Virus record (IMG/VR): IMGVR_UViG_3300032315_001715
Span: 310,001-374,000 of that record
Direction: 5' to 3' (one strand)
DNA: 64,000 bases
The notes under the pieces are model-generated. The model was not told the origin of the DNA and ran no database searches. It worked only from the letters and a program-made list of their open reading frames with translations. Below, piece after piece: positions 11,051 to 61,402 of the stretch. Positions within the stretch are counted from its first letter, which is position 1, and the number at the start of each line of letters is the position of its first letter. Both the position numbers and the translations under genes were made by a program.

Positions 11051-11125
11051 GCTTTGCTGTGCTGGTGGACAGCCGGAGGCCTCTAAAACCTCGCAGTGAT
11101 GGTTCAATTCCGTCGCAGAGCACCA
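11051..11125 (+). tRNA. tRNA with CUA anticodon (amber suppressor-type), discriminator A73
   Basis: Acceptor GCTTTGC/GCAGAGC + ACCA; anticodon loop CT-CTA-AA (11083-11085); T arm GATGG-TTCAATT-CCGTC. Confidence 0.82.
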
Positions 11126-11130
11126 AGTTT

Positions 11131-11206
11131 GCTTCCATAGTTCAGTGGTCAGAACGGAGACCTCTAAATTCTCTTGTCGCAGGTTCGAATCCTGCTGGAA
11201 GCGCCA
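11131..11206 (+). tRNA. tRNA with CUA anticodon (amber suppressor-type), discriminator G73
   Basis: Acceptor GCTTCCA/TGGAAGC + GCCA; D arm GTTC/GAAC; loop CT-CTA-AA (11164-11166); T arm GCAGG-TTCGAAT-CCTGC. Confidence 0.9.
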
Positions 11207-26734: not shown

Positions 26735-27313
26735 ATGGTAAACATTTTTCTCGTCAGCGACACTCACTTCGGTCATAAGAACATCTGTCTGTTCAACGGA
26801 CCGGACGGAAGTCCACTGCGTCCATGGGATGATCCCGATGAGATGGACGAGGCCATGGTCGAAAGATGGAACGGTGTGGTTAAACCAAATGACGTGGTTT
26901 ATCACCTCGGTGACGTGGTGATGAACCGCCGATGTCTTGCTACCGTTGCCCGGCTCAACGGAGACAAACGGCTAATACTCGGTAATCACGATATTTTTGA
27001 TCACAGCGACTATCTCGTGCATTTCAAACGGTTGCACGGTAGTTACAAGCTGGACAACTTCCTGCTAACCCATATACCGGTGCATATTGACTCAGTTGCC
27101 CATTGGACTGAATGTAACATCCACGGGCATGTACATGCCCACGATATTCCCAGTGGCAAGTATTTCAACGTCAGCGTGGAAATGATCGGCTACACGCCGA
27201 TTAGCCTTGAGGATGCTAGGGTTCGAATCAGGGAAAAGCAGGAAAAATATAAGGTTGACATGCAGCAGAATGATGCTAATTTGCCAATTGAAAATAGGAG
27301 AACTGCCGAGTGA
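26735..27313 (+). CDS. calcineurin-like metallophosphoesterase
   Basis: SDTHFGH, LGD, GNHD, THIP, HGHVH. Confidence 0.9.
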   Translation: MVNIFLVSDTHFGHKNICLFNGPDGSPLRPWDDPDEMDEAMVERWNGVVKPNDVVYHLGDVVMNRRCLATVARLNGDKRLILGNHDIFDHSDYLVHFKRLHGSYKLDNFLLTHIPVHIDSVAHWTECNIHGHVHAHDIPSGKYFNVSVEMIGYTPISLEDARVRIREKQEKYKVDMQQNDANLPIENRRTAE

Positions 27314-28767
27314 CAACACCTACCGCTACTAAAGTTCGTTCAATTCGTCGCGACGAGGGCTATCAGGATCCAATCAAGCTTTATCTCAAGGATGTGGGCA
27401 AGGCTCCATTGCTGACCCATAAGCAAGAGATCGAAATTAGCCAAACCATCGAAGCTTCGAAGCAGGCCATCACTGATCGGCTTCTTGGGATCCCCTTGAC
27501 CATTGCTACCGTTACATCCTGGATTGATGCTGCACGCATCAATGGACAGGATGCCCTCGAGGTGTTTGATATTGAACTGGATGATACCGACTCGGTTAGT
27601 CCAGACTTTCTAATACAGCTCGATCAGGTCAAGGAACTTTGTGAACGCTATCATACCGACGTGTCGAATATCGAACTGAGATCCCAGTTGGTCGAAATGT
27701 TCAACGAGCTTCCGTTGAATCCTGCTAGCATTGGCCATCTCATGGAGCAGATGATCGGCTTTAACAAGCAGGTCGTAACCATTGACGGTGAAATGCTGCG
27801 CCTGGCCGAAAGCTGCGGGATCAAGCGAGAGGAATGGCTCAAGGACTATCTGTTGAATGACGATCTTTCATGGATCGAGGCTTGTGCCGGGCGATCGTAC
27901 GAACTAATGCGAACGACATATCATGAAAAAATGTCCACCATTGCAGATCGAATCAATGAGATCAACGGTCTTACCGGGATGAGCCTTCGAGAGCTCCGAG
28001 AAACCGTCAAGGATTTGCGGGTACAAGCCAAGATCAAGGAAGCCGCTATCCAACGAATGGTTACTTCCAATCTGCGTCTCGTGGTTAGCGTGGCCAAGCG
28101 ATACAATCAAAACAACCCAACAACCCTGCTCGATCTAGTGCAGGAAGGCAACATCGGCCTGATCAAGGCCGTTGAAAAGTTCAAATGGCGCCTAGGCTAT
28201 CGGTTTAGCACATATGCTACTTGGTGGATTCGCCAGGCTATCATCAAGGCTACTACCGAACACAGCAAGACCATTCGGGTGCCTAGCCACGTTCTTGATG
28301 CGATCAAGAAGATCAATCGGGCTGCCAAGGAATATGTGAGCTCACACGGTTACGAGCCAAGTGATGCTGAGCTTGGCAAGCTGGTTGGCATGGATCCCGA
28401 AAAGGTCAATCGCATGCTACAGGTTGCCAAGGATCCGATCAGCCTCGAAACTCCGGTCGGTGATGATGAGGACTCAAACATCGGCAACTATATCGAGGAT
28501 CATTCCGCAATTGATGCCATTGAAAAGATCAACGATGACGATGTTGCTCGTGTGGTGGCCGAAGCACTCGGCACGCTAAACAGTCGAGAAGAGCGCGTAA
28601 TCCGCATGCGGTTTGGTATCGGTACCATGGACGAGCACACCCTGGAGGAGATTGGTAAGCGGTTTAACGTAACCCGTGAGCGGGTTCGACAGATCGAAGC
28701 CAAGGCCTTGCAGCGCCTGCAGACCCCGCAGCGCCTCAAGGAGCTCGAGTCGGCACTCGAGGACTAA
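27310..28767 (+). CDS. rpoD: RpoD-like primary sigma factor lacking region 1.1
   Basis: DPIKLYL (1.2), long non-conserved region, SNLRLVVSVAKRY, DLVQEGNIGL, STYATWWIRQAI, TLEEIG...TRERVRQIE. Confidence 0.95.
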   Translation: MTTPTATKVRSIRRDEGYQDPIKLYLKDVGKAPLLTHKQEIEISQTIEASKQAITDRLLGIPLTIATVTSWIDAARINGQDALEVFDIELDDTDSVSPDFLIQLDQVKELCERYHTDVSNIELRSQLVEMFNELPLNPASIGHLMEQMIGFNKQVVTIDGEMLRLAESCGIKREEWLKDYLLNDDLSWIEACAGRSYELMRTTYHEKMSTIADRINEINGLTGMSLRELRETVKDLRVQAKIKEAAIQRMVTSNLRLVVSVAKRYNQNNPTTLLDLVQEGNIGLIKAVEKFKWRLGYRFSTYATWWIRQAIIKATTEHSKTIRVPSHVLDAIKKINRAAKEYVSSHGYEPSDAELGKLVGMDPEKVNRMLQVAKDPISLETPVGDDEDSNIGNYIEDHSAIDAIEKINDDDVARVVAEALGTLNSREERVIRMRFGIGTMDEHTLEEIGKRFNVTRERVRQIEAKALQRLQTPQRLKELESALED

Positions 28768-38195: not shown

Positions 38196-38417
38196 ATGCG
38201 ATATTCGAATCCAGTTCAACGAGATCAACCAGTTAAGGTGACCTGCATTGACAACGGGAAAACCATTGATGCGATCCTAGTGGATCGATTCCAGGAGAAG
38301 ATTGTCGTTGAACTACCTGGTGGTATTCGAATGACCATGCATAGACATCAAACGCAAACGAATATATACATTACAAACAACAGTGGGATGGAATTCCAAT
38401 GCAAACTAACAACGTAA
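38196..38417 (+). CDS. hypothetical protein
   Basis: TTGACA at 38136 upstream; similar to 29501-29722. Confidence 0.6.
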   Translation: MRYSNPVQRDQPVKVTCIDNGKTIDAILVDRFQEKIVVELPGGIRMTMHRHQTQTNIYITNNSGMEFQCKLTT

Positions 38418-38710
38418 ACGCAGCAGCCAATACCACACCGGCTACTTTTCCGAAACCGTTGTTTTCTTATATCGGTCGAATGTACCATGCCGTGGTTGCC
38501 GCAGGGATACCGGTTGGTTCTCTTAATCGAGATCGTGCTGACACGGTGGTAAGGGATCTATCAAGGACCAATTGGAAGAAAGATAATCTTGACATACACG
38601 CCATGTGGAACAGCGGTGGTGATACGTGGGGACAACTGATCAAGGATGTTAAGAGCTATGCAAAGGATGTAAGCAAGCACCAACGATCGGAAAAATCGAC
38701 CAAAACCTGA
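38399..38710 (+). CDS. hypothetical protein
   Basis: 103 aa, overlaps upstream gene. Confidence 0.55.
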   Translation: MQTNNVNAAANTTPATFPKPLFSYIGRMYHAVVAAGIPVGSLNRDRADTVVRDLSRTNWKKDNLDIHAMWNSGGDTWGQLIKDVKSYAKDVSKHQRSEKSTKT

Positions 38711-38789
38711 CTGCACCGGCAGTTGCATCCTCCATGAACATAGATTGATGTTATCGACGATCTATAAACATAATTTTGGAGGATGTGAA

Positions 38790-38876
38790 ATGTTACGATA
38801 TATTGAAATACGTGCCGCTGAAGGCGGTGATGATAGCAAGCTGTTTGTTCGAGATTTGGCTAATATGGTCCGTTGA
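38790..38876 (+). pseudogene. truncated class I peptide chain release factor-like gene
   Basis: GGAGG RBS + MLRYIEIRAAEGGDDSKLFVRDLANMVR*, matching the LEVRAGTGGDEAALFAGDL motif of RF1/RF2/PrfH; not in ORF track. Confidence 0.7.
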
Positions 38877-38887
38877 TAAATAACTAC

Positions 38888-39850
38888 ATGCTGCTCAATG
38901 AAATATGGCCAGATGATGATTTAATAGATCTTACCGAGGCTGGCATCAAGGATCGCCTCGGTAAGTTTGCCATGGCTGGTGCCCTGGGCGCAGGATTGCT
39001 AGGCGGCGGGTACGGCGTTGGAAAATTGATAGGCGGAGCAGGCAATGCTCCGCAGCCTGCGGCAATTAGTTCTAACCCGTCGGTATCATCTCCCGAAACC
39101 CCCGATCCAACCGCGAATCGCCCATCTACTCAGACCGCTGCTTTCGGGGGTAATCAGGTTCGTGCAGGCGGTGATCCGCACGCCGGCTATCCGAGCGCGC
39201 TGCATTCACAGTCGTCGGCACAACGTCTCGATAGAATTAGAAATTTTACCAATTCGTTGAGACCGTTGATGCAACATGCTAATTCAGTCATACTGGCTGA
39301 CAGGAATAAGCTGATTAGGATTTCGGCTCTTGGTAATCGCGCTACCAACAATGATCGAGCTTGGCTGACCCATCAGATGCAGAGATATGATGTGGAACAG
39401 ATCGGTGCAAATGGTCAACGACGGCCCATGTCTGAGCTAATACGAGACCTGCTGATGAGGATTGACATCATTCCGGATGATCTAGCCATGGCACAAGCTG
39501 CATTGGAAACTGGATGGGGAACGAGTGATCTTGCTAGACAAGGCAATAATTTGTTCGGGCAAAAAGCCACCGGACGGCACCAGGATGCGCAGAAAATACG
39601 CAACGTTGACGGGCTTGATTATAGATCGTACACCAATCCTAGTCTCAGCATCCAAAGCTACACCCATAACCTCAATACACATCCGAGATATGCGGATTTT
39701 AGGCAAGCCAGAGCGCAGCTACGTCGTCAACAGGGAATGAACCCGCAGCTCATGGCAAGGGAATTATCAAAACATCTGCAGGCCTATAGCACCAGCCCAA
39801 CCTATATGGCTGATTTAAATCGAGTGATGAACACCTTGCGTGGTATATGA
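38888..39850 (+). CDS. glucosaminidase (GH73/Bax-like) domain protein
   Basis: AMAQAALETGWG, NNLFGQK, NLNTHPRY, YSTSPTY; start moved to 38888 after ATAAATA. Confidence 0.82.
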   Translation: MLLNEIWPDDDLIDLTEAGIKDRLGKFAMAGALGAGLLGGGYGVGKLIGGAGNAPQPAAISSNPSVSSPETPDPTANRPSTQTAAFGGNQVRAGGDPHAGYPSALHSQSSAQRLDRIRNFTNSLRPLMQHANSVILADRNKLIRISALGNRATNNDRAWLTHQMQRYDVEQIGANGQRRPMSELIRDLLMRIDIIPDDLAMAQAALETGWGTSDLARQGNNLFGQKATGRHQDAQKIRNVDGLDYRSYTNPSLSIQSYTHNLNTHPRYADFRQARAQLRRQQGMNPQLMARELSKHLQAYSTSPTYMADLNRVMNTLRGI

Positions 39851-39888
39851 TTATTGATCATTTTGTAGAAATTTGATTAAAATCAATA

Positions 39889-40275
39889 ATGATCGATATC
39901 AGCATTATCACCGGAAAAATATTCACATCAACTCCGAGCCCTAGCAACGCTAATCCCAAAAGGATGTATGTTAAAATATTTCCTGGCTCGTTTAGCTTGC
40001 AAGCACCTCGGCCCAAGAAGGCAAAGGTGTTGTCTGGGGAACTATTAGTACGATACAGTGGTAGGGAGTGGCCTATCAAGAAAAATGGTGAATTGGTTGG
40101 TGATCAAGGTTTCCTTCAGGGAATATCAACATTGCTTAGGACCGCTAATCTGATAAACGTTGAAGATATCGTGTGGAGCGATAGTCAACGGACAATCAAG
40201 GATACCGTAACCATTAAGGTTGGTAGCAAGCTAGCCCAGGAGATCATTGATCGAGGATGGGCTCAACTGGAATAA
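39889..40275 (+). CDS. hypothetical protein
   Basis: 128 aa ORF. Confidence 0.6.
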   Translation: MIDISIITGKIFTSTPSPSNANPKRMYVKIFPGSFSLQAPRPKKAKVLSGELLVRYSGREWPIKKNGELVGDQGFLQGISTLLRTANLINVEDIVWSDSQRTIKDTVTIKVGSKLAQEIIDRGWAQLE

Positions 40276-40303
40276 ATATCACTTGATATAACGGGGATGT
40301 TCC

Positions 40304-40747
40304 ATGGATAATCTAGTAAACGGCCTTAAGGTGCTCCTAGCATCAGATTTTGTTTTGTATCTCAAGACACATTCGGCACACTGGAATGTAAAGGGCATGT
40401 TTTTCAAAGAGCTGCACGAGCTGTTTGGAGATCAATACCAAGATCTCTGGAACAACGTTGATACCATTGCCGAAAAAATACGCATGCTAGATGCCGAAGT
40501 TACGCTAACACCCCAGGAACAACAAAGCCTATCAATAATTGAGCCAGATCAGCTGATACAAGACGGTGTTGGTTATTGTAAGACCCTGCTAAATGATCAC
40601 AACCGCATGATCATGCTGCTAAACAAGGTCTTTGTCCTTGCCGAAGCTGATCGGAATCAAGCGGTGATGAATTATATCGCAGATAGGCTGGATGCCCATG
40701 CAAAGCATCGTTGGTTCTTAAAAGCGACAATTGATCGCGCAGTTTGA
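40304..40747 (+). CDS. dps: Dps/ferritin-like protein
   Basis: HSAHWNVKG..FKELHELFGDQY, DTIAEKIR, HAKHRWFL. Confidence 0.9.
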   Translation: MDNLVNGLKVLLASDFVLYLKTHSAHWNVKGMFFKELHELFGDQYQDLWNNVDTIAEKIRMLDAEVTLTPQEQQSLSIIEPDQLIQDGVGYCKTLLNDHNRMIMLLNKVFVLAEADRNQAVMNYIADRLDAHAKHRWFLKATIDRAV

Positions 40748-40876: not shown

Positions 40877-41296
40877 ATGGACTGTTTTGAACACTTTATC
40901 CGTGATGCCGGTAGCATCTATGTCGGCAATCATCTCATCGTGGATCTATGGGGAATTGAAAACCATTTCAATCCGGATGAAATTACCGAGACTTTTATAC
41001 ATTCATGCCAAGATGCTGGTGCAACCGTCTTATTCAGCCATTGTCATCCTTTTGGACCAGATTGCGGAACTACCGGGGTCATAGTATTGGCTGAAAGCCA
41101 TCTAAGCTGGCATCATTATCCAGAGGTCAACATGATCAGCATAGACATTTTCATGTGCGGCGTTGCTGATCCAACGAAAGCCATGCCTCGGATCAGGGAT
41201 TTTTGGCGTCCAACCCATATGGACAAATCCAATCTTAGGCGAGGATGCGTTGAGGAGCACAAGCTGGTTAAGCGATTGACAGGTGCTGATTCGTAG
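40877..41296 (+). CDS. speD: S-adenosylmethionine decarboxylase proenzyme
   Basis: GNHLIVDL, GTTGVIVLAESH (E|S cleavage), HHYPE, DIFMCG; ends in TAG. Confidence 0.92.
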   Translation: MDCFEHFIRDAGSIYVGNHLIVDLWGIENHFNPDEITETFIHSCQDAGATVLFSHCHPFGPDCGTTGVIVLAESHLSWHHYPEVNMISIDIFMCGVADPTKAMPRIRDFWRPTHMDKSNLRRGCVEEHKLVKRLTGADS

Positions 41297-51465: not shown

Positions 51466-52563
51466 ATGGCACACAAGTACGATATGGCCGTATTCATCGG
51501 CCGATTCCAACCATTCCATCTAGGTCACCGAGCGGTGATCGAACAGGGGCTTGAACAAGCAGACCACGTCGTGGTGCTTGTTGGCTCCGCCCGCAGCCCG
51601 CGTTGCCATCGCAATCCGTTCAGCTTTGCCGAGCGCAAGGAAATGATCCTCGGTGCATTTTCCGGTGAGGTTCGCGATCGGGTCATCGTCCTGCCACTCG
51701 AGGATGCTGCATACAATGATGCGCAGTGGGTCCTCAATGTGCAAAAGCAGGTAGAGCAGGGTGCATGGTACGCCGGTCTGGCTGGTGCTACACTAGGTAC
51801 AATTTCCGAGAAGGTCCGCGTTGCGCTCATCGGTCACAGCAAGGACGCAACCAGCTACTATCTCAAGCTGTTCCCGCAGTGGGATAACATTGAGGTGTCC
51901 AATTTCCGAGATCTCAACGGCACGCTGATCCGCAGCACGTTTTTCAGCAACATCGGACACATGTGGGTCAAGGACGCTGACGGTCACCGCGCCGGCGATC
52001 TCCCGCGTGATGCAACCATCACTGGCAACGTGCGAGAGTTCCTCGAAGGATTCATTGACACGCCAGAATACAAGCTGATCCGGGATGAAAACGAGTTCAT
52101 CCGCAAGTACCGTGCGAGCTGGGCATCAGCGCCTTACGCACCGACATTCGTTACCGTGGATGCCATCGTGGTGCAGAGTGGACATGTGCTGCTGGTGCGC
52201 CGAGGTGCCAACCCGGGCAAGGGACTGTGGGCCATGCCTGGCGGGTTCATCAACGCTGATGAACGCATCCGCAATGCCGTGATCCGCGAGCTTCGTGAGG
52301 AAACCGGCATCAAGGTGCCTGATGCGGTGCTGCGTGGTAGCATTGTTGAACAGGACGTGTTTGACGATCCCAATCGATCGGCACGTGGACGCACGATCAC
52401 GCATGCGTTCCTCATCAAGCTGCGTGACGAGACCGCGCTGCCCAAGGTCAAGGGCATGGACGATGCTGACAAGGCACGATGGGTTCCCATCAGCCAGCTC
52501 AAGCCCGAGGATTTTTTTGAAGATCACTACCATATAGTGATGTCAATGTTGGCTCGGATCTGA
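51466..52563 (+). CDS. nadM: bifunctional NMN adenylyltransferase / ADP-ribose pyrophosphatase (NadM-Nudix)
   Basis: GRFQPFHLGH, RNPFSFAER; Nudix box GGF...AVIRELREETG. Confidence 0.95.
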   Translation: MAHKYDMAVFIGRFQPFHLGHRAVIEQGLEQADHVVVLVGSARSPRCHRNPFSFAERKEMILGAFSGEVRDRVIVLPLEDAAYNDAQWVLNVQKQVEQGAWYAGLAGATLGTISEKVRVALIGHSKDATSYYLKLFPQWDNIEVSNFRDLNGTLIRSTFFSNIGHMWVKDADGHRAGDLPRDATITGNVREFLEGFIDTPEYKLIRDENEFIRKYRASWASAPYAPTFVTVDAIVVQSGHVLLVRRGANPGKGLWAMPGGFINADERIRNAVIRELREETGIKVPDAVLRGSIVEQDVFDDPNRSARGRTITHAFLIKLRDETALPKVKGMDDADKARWVPISQLKPEDFFEDHYHIVMSMLARI

Positions 52564-52566
52564 ATC

Positions 52567-52938
52567 ATGTACACCGTGCAAGAAATGCGCGACATCGTCG
52601 CCCTGTGCCGGTTCGAGGAGTGGAACATCGTGGTTCGCATGGATGGAACTCGGCCGTATCTCCAGGTACATGCACCCAATGGACGGGATGCTGAAACCGG
52701 CTTGCCCATGCCATGGACCGGTCGCAAGTGGATGCTGAGTCCCCATATGTGCAAGAACGAGATCGTCACCACGGCTTTCAAGGCGGTGATGACTGCCATG
52801 GAGCATGAGGTCCGTGAGAGCTTTCGTTATCGCGGTGTAGCGATCTTCAATCCGCACCAGGACCCGGATAAGCTCGTTGACTTTGTCAGCGATGATGCTA
52901 ATATGCAAGAGAGAACTAACGTGGCGTTTGCCGCGTAA
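52567..52938 (+). CDS. conserved phage hypothetical protein
   Basis: WTGRKWMLSPHM...AMEHEVRESF; lies between NAD genes. Confidence 0.75.
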   Translation: MYTVQEMRDIVALCRFEEWNIVVRMDGTRPYLQVHAPNGRDAETGLPMPWTGRKWMLSPHMCKNEIVTTAFKAVMTAMEHEVRESFRYRGVAIFNPHQDPDKLVDFVSDDANMQERTNVAFAA

Positions 52939-52995
52939 TCCAATACTACCCCGTGGGGATAGACCCCGCGGACAACAAAGCAAAGGAGATTTGCA

Positions 52996-54387
52996 ATGCG
53001 TTATAATCTACTGTTGGATACCGACAGCTACAAGGCAAGCCATGCCTTCCAGTATCCGCCGAACACCACCCGGGTATTCAGCTACATCGAAAGCCGAGGT
53101 GGCGAATTTGATCGCACGGTGTTCTTCGGCCTGCAGATGTACCTCAAGCAATACCTGTCCACGCCCATTACCCAGGACATGGTCGATGAGGCCGCAGAAT
53201 TCTGGGCCGCACACGGCGAGCCCTTCAATCGCGAAGGCTGGGAATACATCGTCAATGCACACGGCGGTCGCCTGCCGGTGGTGATCAAGGCCGTTCGCGA
53301 GGGTGCGGTGATCCCGACCCGCAACGTCTTGCTCACCATAGAAAACACCGATCCGCGGTGCTTCTGGCTCACCTCCTTCCTGGAAACCGCGTTGCTGCGT
53401 GCCGTTTGGTACCCGACGACGGTGGCCACGCTGAGCTGGCACGGCAAGCAGATCATTCGGTCCGCCCTGGCAACGTCCGCCGAGGACGTTGAGGGCCAGC
53501 TGCCGTTTAAGCTGCACGACTTTGGTGCCCGCGGTGTAAGCTCCCGGGAGAGCGCCGGTCTCGGTGCCGCTGCCCACCTGGTGAACTTCATGGGATCGGA
53601 CACCGTCACCGGTGTTCTCTACGCCCGGGAATTCTATGGCGCTCCCATGGCAGGGTTTTCCATCCCCGCTGCTGAACACTCGACCATCACCAGCTGGGGT
53701 CGCAGCCGTGAAGCTGACGCATATGCCAACATGCTGGCACAGTTTGGCAAGCCCGGTGCGCTGTTTGCCGTGGTCAGCGACAGCTATGACATCATGAACG
53801 CTGCGCGGGAGATCTGGGGCGGCGACCTCAAGCGGTCGGTGATGTCCAGTGGTTCCACCCTGGTGGTGCGTCCGGACAGCGGCGACCCACTGACGGTGCC
53901 GGTGGATGTCGTGGAAGCACTGGGCGAGCGGTTCGGCTACACCCTGAACTCCAAGGGGTTCCGCGTGTTGCCGAGCTGCGTGCGGGTGATCCAGGGAGAT
54001 GGCATCACCATCAACAGCCTGCCCAAGATCCTGGGCAATCTGCTCGGTTGTGGTTGGAGCGCGGACAACATGGCGTTTGGCATGGGCGGCGGGCTGTTGC
54101 AGCTGGTCAACCGCGATACGTTGAAGTTTGCCATGAAATGCTCGGCTGCCATGATCGACGGCGAATGGGTTGACGTGTTCAAGGATCCCATCACCGACGC
54201 TGGCAAGCAGAGCAAGCGGGGCCAGCTGATGCTGACCCGGGAGACCGGCAAGTGGGAGACCATGCGACTGGGCAGCGGTTTTGACTGGGCCAACAGCCTG
54301 CACACCGTGTGGCAAAATGGCGAGCTTGTGCGGGATTGGACCTTTGATGAGGTGCGTGCGGCCAGCAACGAGCCCGTGCTTGATTAA
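52996..54387 (+). CDS. nadV: nicotinamide phosphoribosyltransferase
   Basis: DTDSYKASH, LHDFGARG, IPAAEHS, VSDSYD, RPDSGDP, IQGDGI, FGMGG. Confidence 0.96.
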   Translation: MRYNLLLDTDSYKASHAFQYPPNTTRVFSYIESRGGEFDRTVFFGLQMYLKQYLSTPITQDMVDEAAEFWAAHGEPFNREGWEYIVNAHGGRLPVVIKAVREGAVIPTRNVLLTIENTDPRCFWLTSFLETALLRAVWYPTTVATLSWHGKQIIRSALATSAEDVEGQLPFKLHDFGARGVSSRESAGLGAAAHLVNFMGSDTVTGVLYAREFYGAPMAGFSIPAAEHSTITSWGRSREADAYANMLAQFGKPGALFAVVSDSYDIMNAAREIWGGDLKRSVMSSGSTLVVRPDSGDPLTVPVDVVEALGERFGYTLNSKGFRVLPSCVRVIQGDGITINSLPKILGNLLGCGWSADNMAFGMGGGLLQLVNRDTLKFAMKCSAAMIDGEWVDVFKDPITDAGKQSKRGQLMLTRETGKWETMRLGSGFDWANSLHTVWQNGELVRDWTFDEVRAASNEPVLD

Positions 54388-60145: not shown

Positions 60146-61402
60146 ATGAGCACATTTTCCTGCCCGCTGGTTCGGGTATCCGAGGTCATTGACCATCCCA
60201 ATGCCGACCGGCTCAGTATCGTCAAGCTGGAAGGTCTGGGTTATACCTGCATCAGCGGCAAGCTGGAGGACGGTAGCCCGCGCTACAAGGCGGGAGACTG
60301 GGTGGTTTACATTCCCAGCGCCGCCATTTTGCCTGAATACCTGCTCAAGGAAATGGATTTCTGGAATGCAGAAACCCGCAAGGGTATGCTAGCAGGCAGC
60401 AACGGCGATCGGGTAAAGCCTCTCCGTTTGCGAGGCATCTTCAGCGAGGGTGTGCTGTATCCAGCATCAGTCACTGTGAATGACAACACTGAGATGATGC
60501 CTGAAGGTTATCTGCGCCGATACTGGCAAGTGGCCCTAGGAGAAAGCGATGGCGAGCTTTTGATGCGCATCGTGCGGCTCATGCCCGTGAATAAGCTGGA
60601 GGCTGTTGAGAGTATTGCCGGGCGCGATATGAGCGAACGTCTGGGCATCACCAAGTACGAGCCGCCCATCCCAGTCCACATGGCGGGTGAGGTAGCCAAC
60701 CTGTTTGACCACACCGTGCGCTACGATTTTGAGCGACTGGAGAGCGTGCCTGACATGTTTGCTTCAGACATGACGGTAACGGCCACTGAAAAGCTGCACG
60801 GAACCTTTTGCGCCATTGTCTATGAGCCTGGGCTAAACCACGCCGAGATGTTTGGCACCAACGGTGACATCATCGTCCACAGCAAGGGTCTCGGTGGTCA
60901 GGGCCTGGCGTTCAAGAACAACGCAGCCAATGACGGTAACCTCTATGTCAAGACCCTGCGCAAGCTGCTTGGTGACGGTCTGGAAGATCGCTTTCGCACC
61001 CTGGCCACCAGCTATGCTGGCAAGCGTTATGCCATCCTGGGCGAGATCTATGGAAAGGGTGTGCAGGACCTAGCCTATGGCACCAAGGAGCCTGAGTTCC
61101 GCATGTTTGATGTGATGGTGGATGATATCTTCCTACCACAGGACGAGCTGGGATTTGATCATTCATTGCATGGCATCCCGTTTGCACCCGTCCTCTACAA
61201 TGGACCGTTTAACATTGAGGCGCTTACCGCGGTGCGAGACGGCAAGACAACTGTAGGCGGAGATAACATCCGCGAAGGCATCGTGGTGCGTGCGGGTTGG
61301 TGGCAGCGCCATCCCATTCATGGTCGTCGGATCGCCAAGATGATCAGCCCTGACTACCTCTTGCGCAAGGTCAAGGGTGGCGAAGCAACGGAATATACCT
61401 AA
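60146..61402 (+). CDS. RNA ligase (DRB0094/Rnl5 family)
   Basis: HPNADRL OB-like N-domain, LRGIFSEG, TEKLHGT, GEIYG, FDV, REGIV, KMISPDYL. Confidence 0.9.
   Translation: MSTFSCPLVRVSEVIDHPNADRLSIVKLEGLGYTCISGKLEDGSPRYKAGDWVVYIPSAAILPEYLLKEMDFWNAETRKGMLAGSNGDRVKPLRLRGIFSEGVLYPASVTVNDNTEMMPEGYLRRYWQVALGESDGELLMRIVRLMPVNKLEAVESIAGRDMSERLGITKYEPPIPVHMAGEVANLFDHTVRYDFERLESVPDMFASDMTVTATEKLHGTFCAIVYEPGLNHAEMFGTNGDIIVHSKGLGGQGLAFKNNAANDGNLYVKTLRKLLGDGLEDRFRTLATSYAGKRYAILGEIYGKGVQDLAYGTKEPEFRMFDVMVDDIFLPQDELGFDHSLHGIPFAPVLYNGPFNIEALTAVRDGKTTVGGDNIREGIVVRAGWWQRHPIHGRRIAKMISPDYLLRKVKGGEATEYT

What the first reader, a model, noticed from the sequence alone, without database searches (positions are those of the whole stretch)
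38726..38876. Release-factor gene remnant behind an RBS-sequestering hairpin
Seen: an unannotated 28-codon ORF, MLRYIEIRAAEGGDDSKLFVRDLANMVR*, follows the class I release factor motif (E. coli RF1 LEVRAGTGGDEAALFAGDL). Its GGAGG RBS is paired in a long hairpin (CATCCTCCA 38726-38734 / TGGAGGATG 38777-38785). Its TGA abuts the ATAAATA promoter of the next gene, suggesting deletion or replacement of the rest. Inference: this lineage recently carried a regulated release factor, which fits the CUA tRNAs, or the peptide acts as a ribosome-interfering fragment.
Basis: partly seen in the sequence, partly recalled or inferred. Interest (0 to 1): 0.65.

Follow-up and report, generated by a model that had tools for sequence, protein, structure and literature searches.

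The report
Deleted remnant of phage release-factor gene
The 28-codon reading frame is what a 590-base internal deletion left of a phage-encoded, shortened release-factor-1-like gene; close relatives keep that gene intact at the same spot, so it is a recently dead gene, not a new peptide.

Summary
An ATG at 38790 (not 38791) opens a 28-codon frame ending at TGA 38874-38876. A GGAGG ribosome-binding site precedes it and is paired in a strong hairpin (-27 to -29 kcal/mol, z about -4).

The window belongs to a 452.8-kb virus record with 43 tRNAs and a tmRNA. A lake-metagenome relative about 90% identical (L129) has the same neighbours and an intact 227-codon gene. That gene is RF1-like, lacks domain 1, and has PPT at the PxT position, GGQ, and one in-frame TGA at codon 36.

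BLAST shows that 590 nt of it (codons 25-222) are missing from the window. The frame shifts at 38863/38864, which creates the TGA. The last 16 nt of the old gene survive, including its TAA and an ATAAATA box.

More distant syntenic relatives either keep the gene (L126, L128) or lack it (L130, L131). The occluding hairpin recurs with different sequences in the relatives that keep the gene, so it is the gene's own leader.

No GGQ domain remains anywhere in the genome. A link to the CUA tRNAs and a ribosome-interfering peptide have no support.

In passing: more than 100 viral contigs carry this gene with a conserved UGA or a prfB-like +1 frameshift site at one position.

The parts
38399..38710 (+). 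Upstream gene (103 aa, no family match), ending in TGA one base before the leader structures
   Evidence: Orthologues sit in the same position in L126, L130 and L131 at 58-68% identity.
38711..38722 (+). Small 4-bp hairpin (CUGCACCGGCAG) directly after the upstream stop codon
   Evidence: Folds.
38723..38788 (+). Long hairpin that pairs the ribosome-binding site.
   Evidence: z -3.9 to -4.15. The arms are identical in L129 while the loop has diverged. L126 and L128 have analogous occluding hairpins built from other sequences.
38778..38782 (+). GGAGG Shine-Dalgarno, 7 nt before the ATG, fully paired in the hairpin
38790..38876 (+). The 28-codon ORF, including its TGA stop
38790..38863 (+). Retained 5' end of the release-factor gene: codons 1-24 plus 2 nt. 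Residues 1-24 are identical to L129.
   Evidence: BLAST: L129 8-152 matches window 38720-38863 at 87.6%. tblastn: 24/24 identical. There are three synonymous differences.
38863..38864 (+). Deletion junction. 590 nt (L129 153-742, codons 25-222) are missing here, so the frame shifts.
   Evidence: Loose ends of a relative's contigs at 38860 and 38864 show the same thing.
38864..38879 (+). Retained 3' end of the old gene: 2 nt of a Leu codon, then the codons for W-S-V-D-K and the TAA stop, in the original frame (now +1 relative to the ORF). The new TGA at 38874 arises from GTT GAT read out of frame.
   Evidence: L129 reads ...GYMDQLWSVDK*. The C-termini of other family members end similarly, in ...DLLW(K).
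38876..38882 (+). ATAAATA box, 5 nt before the ATG of the next gene. It overlaps the old gene's stop codon.
   Evidence: The pattern ATAAATA-N3-7-ATG occurs 8 times in the window against 1.04 expected. Six of the 8 open ORFs of 65 aa or more. A similar box precedes the orthologous gene in L126, L128, L130 and L131.
38888..39850 (+). Next gene: 320-aa protein with a C-terminal glucosaminidase (endolysin-like) domain and no Shine-Dalgarno of its own
   Evidence: Pfam PF01832, E 1.9e-22. PHROGs endolysin families. Orthologues found.

Best explanation
The ORF is a dead remnant. This megaphage's ancestor carried a roughly 227-codon release-factor-1-like gene without domain 1, lying between the 103-aa gene and the glucosaminidase gene. 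A single 590-bp internal deletion removed codons 25-222, which held the in-frame UGA, the PxT-type codon-reading loop and the GGQ catalytic loop. The deletion joined codon 24/25 to the last five codons out of frame.

What survives is the gene's leader (a hairpin that occludes the ribosome-binding site), its start codon, 24 native codons, four frame-shifted codons, a new TGA, and the old 3' end. That 3' end overlaps the promoter-like ATAAATA box of the downstream gene.

Shown: the homology, the synteny, the deletion end points, and the absence of the rest of the gene from the genome.

Inferred: that the peptide has no function, and that the deletion end point was tolerated because it spared the downstream gene's start signals.
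For: - Close relative. L129 is about 90% identical in the flanking genes and has the intact gene in the same place. BLAST gives two colinear blocks, with 590 nt present only in L129.
- Independent sample. A contig from another lake metagenome runs on from 38860 as ...KAYQKLADRR. A second contig arrives at 38864 from ...HYLKGYMDQ.
- Synteny. Clp protease, methyltransferase, the small genes, glucosaminidase, the 128-aa gene and AdoMet decarboxylase are colinear in L126, L128, L130 and L131. L126 and L128 have the intact gene.
- Nothing left elsewhere. The genome has no RF-1/GGQ domain, and tblastn with four full-length relatives finds only the N-terminal 22-24 residues.
- The assembly holds. A 31.7-kb contig from a separate assembly pipeline (Logan), probably built from the source sample's own reads, is identical across the junction.
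- Decay recurs. Another truncated copy exists in L026.
Against: - The leader, Shine-Dalgarno, start codon and 24 codons are undamaged, so the short ORF could still be translated and might have acquired a role.
- Only contigs were available, not raw reads, so a minority genotype with an intact gene in the source sample cannot be excluded.
- The closest intact relative is known only from a 2.5-kb contig.
Confidence: 0.9

Rival explanations
1. The remnant has been co-opted as a leader ORF. Ribosomes that translate the 28 codons end 12 nt before the ATG of the glucosaminidase gene, which has no Shine-Dalgarno, and re-initiate there. The hairpin would then control the downstream gene. This is compatible with a deletion origin.
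For: - The downstream ATG at 38888 has no Shine-Dalgarno, whereas the remnant has a strong one.
- In intact relatives the release-factor stop lies 4-8 nt before that ATG.
Against: - L130 and L131 express the same downstream gene with no release-factor gene or remnant upstream, and also without a Shine-Dalgarno.
- An ATAAATA box 4-6 nt before the ATG is common to all of them and enriched before starts genome-wide. That suggests the downstream gene has its own promoter and a near-leaderless transcript.
Confidence: 0.12
2. The 28-residue peptide is a functional fragment that binds ribosomes or interferes with termination.
For: - The 24 native residues are unchanged from the intact orthologue.
- The expression signals are intact.
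Against: - The piece matches only prfA model positions 107-129. It lacks the PxT loop, the GGQ domain and most of domain 2.
- Its last four residues are an accident of the frame shift.
- All three nucleotide differences from L129 are synonymous, but selection in the lineage with the intact gene explains that equally well.
- None of roughly 125 other loci carries this same truncation.
Confidence: 0.04
3. Assembly artefact: the real genome holds an intact gene and the assembler skipped 590 nt.
For: - Only contigs could be laid on the stretch, and the best holder is probably the source sample.
Against: - A separate assembly pipeline (Logan) gives an identical 31.7-kb contig at word depth 15.
- No repeat flanks the junction that could cause a collapse; microhomology is at most 2-3 nt.
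Confidence: 0.03

Closest known systems
Bacterial release factor 1 (PrfA)
   Same: The intact orthologues match prfA models over positions 107-334 of 347 (E 1e-46 to 1e-82), which is 60-80 bits better than prfB. They have a PxT-position tripeptide (PPT) and GGQ. The remnant aligns to RF1 residues about 109-130.
   Different: The whole family lacks domain 1 and scores below the curated prfA cut-offs. Most members carry an in-frame stop or a frameshift site. The window keeps only 24 codons.
Phage-encoded RF1/RF2 of huge phages and stop-codon-recoded phages (Al-Shayeb et al. 2020, PMC7162821; Borges et al. preprint, 10.1101/2021.08.26.457843)
   Same: These are release-factor genes carried by very large phages alongside tRNAs, tmRNA and initiation factors. 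The megaphage records LR756501-4 and LR745206 hold the same short protein. In other phages the gene sits in or beside tRNA arrays and IF-1.
   Different: Those papers report presence and link it to recoding. In the passages I searched they do not mention a domain-1-less form, a conserved in-frame UGA in standard-code phages, or a frameshift site. Here the gene is dead.
prfB (RF2) autoregulatory +1 frameshift
   Same: About 19 family members have GGAGG-N3-CTT-stop-C and continue in the +1 frame for about 185 codons to GGQ. This is the architecture of the prfB site as I know it (established knowledge, not tested here).
   Different: The protein is RF1-like, not RF2. The site lies in domain 2, not domain 1. 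The stop is TGA, TAG or TAA. The window's lineage uses in-frame UGA instead, and the window has lost that site.
PrfH (domain-1-less release-factor homologue paired with RtcB)
   Same: No domain 1, and a similar length of about 200-230 aa.
   Different: The match to the PrfH model is weak (33-87 bits against a cut-off of 167) and far below the prfA score. None of the recurrent neighbour families I scanned was RtcB; they are phosphatases, a kinase, IF-1 and tRNAs.
Mimivirus/Megavirus class I release-factor gene with frameshift plus readthrough (Jeudy et al. 2012, PMC3521657)
   Same: A virus-encoded termination factor whose own synthesis needs recoding at internal stop codons.
   Different: That protein is of the eukaryotic/archaeal eRF1 type in a eukaryotic virus. 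The phage family is of bacterial RF1 type.

Membership tests
Class I release factor, RF1 type (functional member) | RF-1 domain with the GGQ peptidyl-tRNA hydrolysis motif | tested here: not met
   No PF00472 match anywhere in the 452.8-kb genome. tblastn with full-length relatives finds only residues 5-28. GGQ lies in the deleted 590 nt.
Class I release factor, RF1 type (functional member) | Codon-recognition tripeptide (PxT in RF1, SPF in RF2) | tested here: not met
   Absent from the window. The intact orthologues L129, L126 and L128 have PPT, as do 86 of 88 type-A genes in which the position was read.
Class I release factor, RF1 type (functional member) | PCRF domain (domain 2) sequence | tested here: inconclusive
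   Only profile positions 103-125 of 194 are present. The score is 21.6 bits against a cut-off of 24.
Gene remnant (pseudogene) of the phage short RF1-like gene | An intact orthologue at the same position between the same neighbours in related genomes | tested here: met
   L129 (about 90% identical), L126/L127 and L128.
Gene remnant (pseudogene) of the phage short RF1-like gene | Both ends of the gene retained, the interior missing, and the frame broken | tested here: met
   L129 8-152 and 743-2547 align to window 38720-38863 and 38864-40644. The 590 missing nt are not a multiple of 3.
Gene remnant (pseudogene) of the phage short RF1-like gene | The junction is real in the DNA, not an assembly error | tested here: inconclusive
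   An identical contig came from a second assembly pipeline, but probably from the same sample's reads. No raw reads were available.
PrfH | Match to the PrfH model above its cut-off, and an RtcB partner gene | tested here: not met
   Intact orthologues score 33-87 bits against a cut-off of 166.65, and prfA scores far higher. None of the recurrent neighbour families scanned was RtcB.
Translational-control hairpin that occludes the Shine-Dalgarno | The Shine-Dalgarno is paired in a structure more stable than shuffles give, and the structure is kept in relatives despite sequence change | tested here: met
   z scores are -3.9 (window), -4.8 (L129), -5.7 (L126) and -2.5 (L128), with different stem sequences. 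L132 is weak (z -1.65), and the feature is not general in the wider family. Its effect on translation was not tested.

The most novel reading that the evidence does not exclude
The parent gene belongs to a phage-borne family of RF1-like factors without domain 1. Their synthesis appears to be gated by failure to terminate at one fixed site in the gene.

- About 90 viral contigs have a single in-frame UGA at the codon that is Trp in RF1. It is 100% conserved in 76 distinct sequences. The other Trp codons in the same genes are TGG, and TGA ends 30% of the conserved neighbour genes.
- About 19 contigs have a prfB-like +1 frameshift cassette at the adjacent codon.
- A few have no interruption.

If both devices are real, phages would make an extra RF1-type factor in proportion to how poorly the cell terminates, mostly at UGA. 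In the window's lineage an RBS-occluding hairpin adds a second gate. The window phage would then be a recent natural knockout of this system.
Probability: 0.4. Interest if true: 0.7.

Novelty: new member of a known kind. Interest (0 to 1): 0.35.

Why it matters
On its own the remnant is ordinary. It shows that this accessory translation gene is dispensable and is lost repeatedly in one group of freshwater megaphages: by deletion here, truncated in L026, and absent from L130 and L131. It also warns against reading small conserved-looking ORFs as new peptides.

Its value is as a pointer. Following it uncovered a large, mostly unannotated family of phage RF1-like genes that gene callers split into a 35-aa and a 180-aa ORF. 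The interruption, either a UGA or a prfB-like shift site, always falls at the same place. If that recoding is real, it is a testable case of a virus tuning a termination factor to the host's termination capacity. The window phage and its 90%-identical relative would form a natural pair with and without the gene.

Tried and rejected
- **Off-frame queries.** (protein 1; protein 1) used 38791 as the start. They gave meaningless hits (F-box protein, baseplate) and are void.
- **Cultured or deposited phages near the locus.** blastn of 2.7 kb found nothing.
- **Close relatives by peptide patterns of the glucosaminidase.** None in viral contigs or metagenome contigs.
- **Patterns built from the relative's loose end.** An exact pattern found nothing in viral contigs. 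A degenerate pattern found nothing in metagenome contigs.
- **Another genetic code for this genome.** Rejected. The longest ORFs do not grow under TAG, TGA or TAA reassignment. Same-frame ORF pairs joined by TAG (55) are no more common than those joined by TAA (64) or TGA (60).
- **A continuation of the gene by frameshift or readthrough in the window.** Rejected. TGA is followed by TAA, and the +1 frame stops after 3 codons. The -1 frame is the glucosaminidase frame but has no release-factor homology.
- **The rest of the gene elsewhere in the genome.** Not found.
- **PrfH identity.** Rejected.
- **The hairpin as an intrinsic terminator.** No T-run and no terminator-like site. The sigma-70-like match inside the loop is at chance level.
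- **The hairpin as a general family feature.** Rejected. Most type-A leaders leave the Shine-Dalgarno open.
- **Homologues of the window's tRNA-CUA pair in five large records with intact genes.** None found; this says little. The ENA and Logan relatives could not be searched as whole records.
- **MAFFT pairwise alignment.** It misplaced the gap. The BLAST blocks are used instead.

Full report
**1. What is in the sequence**

The window is part of a 452,799-bp virus record, at bases 310,001-374,000. The record has 43 tRNA genes and a tmRNA. It reads normally in the standard code.

At 38790 an ATG opens a 28-codon frame, MLRYIEIRAAEGGDDSKLFVRDLANMVR. It ends at TGA 38874-38876, and a TAA follows immediately. 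Several of my first queries used 38791 and were out of frame; they are void.

A GGAGG (38778-38782) lies 7 nt before the ATG. It is paired with CCTCC inside a long hairpin at 38723-38788, and a small hairpin precedes that one. The fold is -27 to -29 kcal/mol, z about -4, and no shuffle folds as well.

The peptide matches the PCRF domain (E 2e-4) and the prfA models (E 1.7e-4) over 23 residues. It matches solved RF1 chains at residues 109-130. It is also the best PCRF match in a six-frame search of the whole genome.

**2. The rest of the gene is not in this genome**

No RF-1/GGQ domain is found anywhere. Full-length relatives used as tblastn queries hit only the 22-24 N-terminal residues. Readthrough or frameshifting in place cannot rescue the gene. 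TGA is followed by TAA, the +1 frame ends after three codons, and the -1 frame is that of the next gene and has no homology.

**3. What the intact gene looks like**

A tblastn of the peptide against deposited phages hit megaphage records LR756501-4 and LR745206. There the motif opens a roughly 225-codon RF1-like protein that starts exactly at this point and so lacks domain 1. Its in-frame stops are all TGA, which fits a TGA=Trp code in those AT-rich records.

Nearly all encode a protein of about 220 residues with PPT at the PxT position and with GGQ. They score 60-80 bits better on prfA than on prfB, and only weakly on PrfH.

**4. The decisive comparison**

Homologues of the downstream glucosaminidase led to contigs from related phages. 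Gene order is the same as in the window: Clp protease, methyltransferase, small genes, [release factor], glucosaminidase, 128-aa gene, (ferritin), AdoMet decarboxylase. Identities run from 36% to 98% across these genes and relatives.

L129 is a 2.5-kb lake-metagenome contig whose glucosaminidase is 90% identical. It has an intact gene at L129:79-762.

BLAST gives two colinear blocks:

| L129 | Window | Identity |
|---|---|---|
| 8-152 | 38720-38863 | 87.6% |
| 743-2547 | 38864-40644 | 91.4% |

L129 153-742 is absent from the window. That is 590 nt, or codons 25-222.

Because 590 is not a multiple of three, the frame shifts at the junction. The old ...L W S V D K TAA is now read as (N) M V R TGA. 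The window's first 24 residues are identical to L129's, with three synonymous differences.

Contigs of two public freshwater runs, which look like one data set filed twice, show the same thing. One contig leaves the window at 38860 and continues as ...KAYQKLADRR. Another enters at 38864 from ...HYLKGYMDQ.

A 31.7-kb contig from a separate assembly pipeline, probably built from the source sample's own reads, is identical across the junction. No raw reads were available. No repeat flanks the junction.

L126/L127 and L128 also keep the gene at this site. L130 and L131 lack it entirely. L026, in the wider family, carries another truncated copy. The gene is therefore an accessory that decays repeatedly.

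**5. The hairpin**

L129 has the same two arms and a diverged loop. L126 pairs CCTCCT with AGGAGG around a different, perfect inner stem (z -5.7). L128 pairs CCTTTTT with AAAAAGG (z -2.5).

So occlusion of the ribosome-binding site is a kept feature of the intact gene in this lineage. It is not a general feature of the wider family, where most leaders leave the site open. It is not terminator-like. How it is opened is unknown. Melting by ribosomes finishing the upstream gene, whose stop codon lies 12 nt before the stem, is an inference only.

**6. The ATAAATA box**

The box at 38876-38882 overlaps the old gene's stop and lies 5 nt before the next ATG. The pattern ATAAATA-N3-7-ATG occurs 8 times in the window against 1.04 expected, and no shuffle reaches 8. 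Six of the eight matches open ORFs of 65 aa or more; genome-wide the figure is 24 of 35.

A similar box precedes the orthologous gene in all relatives, with or without the release-factor gene. It also explains why a deletion that spared the last 16 nt was tolerated; that last step is inference.

**7. Interpretation**

The best-supported reading is a recent internal deletion that left a non-functional stub (confidence about 0.9).

- A leader-ORF role for the stub is possible but not needed, since L130 and L131 do without it.
- A ribosome-interfering peptide has no support.
- The proposed fit with the two tRNA-CUA genes (11051-11206) is untested. The one relevant observation goes against a strict incompatibility: locus L046 has both an intact gene and a tRNA-CUA.

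**8. Seen on the way: recoding in the wider family**

| State at the site | Loci | Detail |
|---|---|---|
| In-frame TGA | 90 | Exactly 31 codons after the Ile of IEIR, at the codon that is Trp in RF1; the frame then continues about 187 codons to GGQ |
| prfB-like +1 site | 19 | GGAGG-N3-CTT-(TGA, TAG or TAA)-C one codon later; the protein continues in the +1 frame |
| Uninterrupted | 1 (L043) | No stop or shift site |

- The TGA is invariant in 76 distinct sequences, while 197 other Trp codons in the same genes are TGG.
- Conserved neighbour genes end in TGA in 43 of 141 cases.
- No tRNA-UCA was found in the loci.
- Gene callers split only this gene, into 35-aa and 180-aa products.

This looks like programmed readthrough or frameshifting that ties synthesis of an RF1-type factor to weak termination. 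It was not tested here, and I found no description of it in the papers I searched. Phage-encoded RF1 and RF2 as such are known (PMC7162821; 10.1101/2021.08.26.457843). A giant-virus eRF1 that needs a frameshift and a readthrough is a precedent (PMC3521657).

**9. Verdict**

- The feature in the window is an ordinary gene remnant of an unusual and little-described phage gene family.

Noticed in passing
L007-L125 (viral contigs); for example L032:1723-2391 (-), L057:1896-2564 (-), L126:4312-4995: About 90 viral contigs carry the short RF1-like gene with one in-frame TGA at a fixed codon, the Trp position of RF1. It is invariant in 76 distinct sequences. The other Trp codons are TGG, and TGA ends 30% of conserved neighbour genes. 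It looks like programmed UGA readthrough. Gene callers split the gene into 35-aa and 180-aa ORFs.
   Followed up: partly
L009, L010, L016, L038, L044, L049, L056, L060, L061, L078, L082, L091, L094, L100, L102, L106, L108, L114, L119: Nineteen contigs have a prfB-like +1 frameshift cassette (GGAGG-N3-CTT-TGA-C, also CTT-TAG-C and CTT-TAA-C) one codon from the type-A UGA site. The protein is RF1-like, and it continues in the +1 frame for about 185 codons to GGQ. Two of them have SPT rather than PPT at the PxT position.
   Followed up: partly
window 11051-11125 and 11131-11206: Two adjacent tRNA genes with CUA anticodons (amber-suppressor type; ARAGORN calls them tRNA-Pyl). They lie far from the main tRNA array at genome 378-414 kb. 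No clear genome-wide TAG recoding was seen. TAG joins 55 of 179 same-frame ORF pairs but ends only 98 of 529 long ORFs, a mild excess that I did not resolve.
   Followed up: partly
window 6848, 9445(-), 11209, 14274, 30089(-), 31535(-), 32971(-), 38876: ATAAATA lies 3-7 nt before an ATG 8 times, against 1.04 expected. Six of these open ORFs of 65 aa or more; genome-wide it is 24 of 35. This suggests a T4-late-like promoter placed so close to the start codons that the transcripts would be nearly leaderless.
   Followed up: partly
genome C1:111695-112033 (-), outside the window: The phage genome encodes a tmRNA (tag AANDNAAFENELLAA) and 43 tRNAs, including two unusually long tRNA-Trp(CCA) predictions at 413842-414106.
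   Followed up: no
L130:4950-5000 and L131:3411-3523: Two syntenic relatives have no release-factor gene between the same neighbours. The 51-nt spacer in L130 still holds a CCTCC-containing stretch followed by GTGTGATAAATA. That could be the trace of a larger, independent deletion.
   Followed up: partly
L026:8666-8761 and downstream: Another decayed copy. Homology to the family stops about 20 codons after the in-frame TGA, and a radical-SAM-like frame follows.
   Followed up: no
type-A loci, for example L096:1038-1253, L053:7022-7540, L096:3395-3994, L058:5529-5990: In other phages the gene sits in or beside tRNA arrays. Its recurrent neighbours are an IF-1 homologue, a dual-specificity-phosphatase-like protein, a metallophosphoesterase (window homologue at 26735-27313) and an AAA_33 kinase. 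Together they look like a translation and RNA-repair gene island.
   Followed up: partly
window 40304-40747, 40877-41296, 51466-54387, 60146-61402, 27310-28767: Auxiliary genes near the locus: a Dps/ferritin-like protein (present in L129, L130 and L131 but absent from L126 and L128), AdoMet decarboxylase, an NAD-salvage pair (nicotinamide phosphoribosyltransferase and a cytidyltransferase/NUDIX protein), an RNA ligase and a sigma factor.
   Followed up: no
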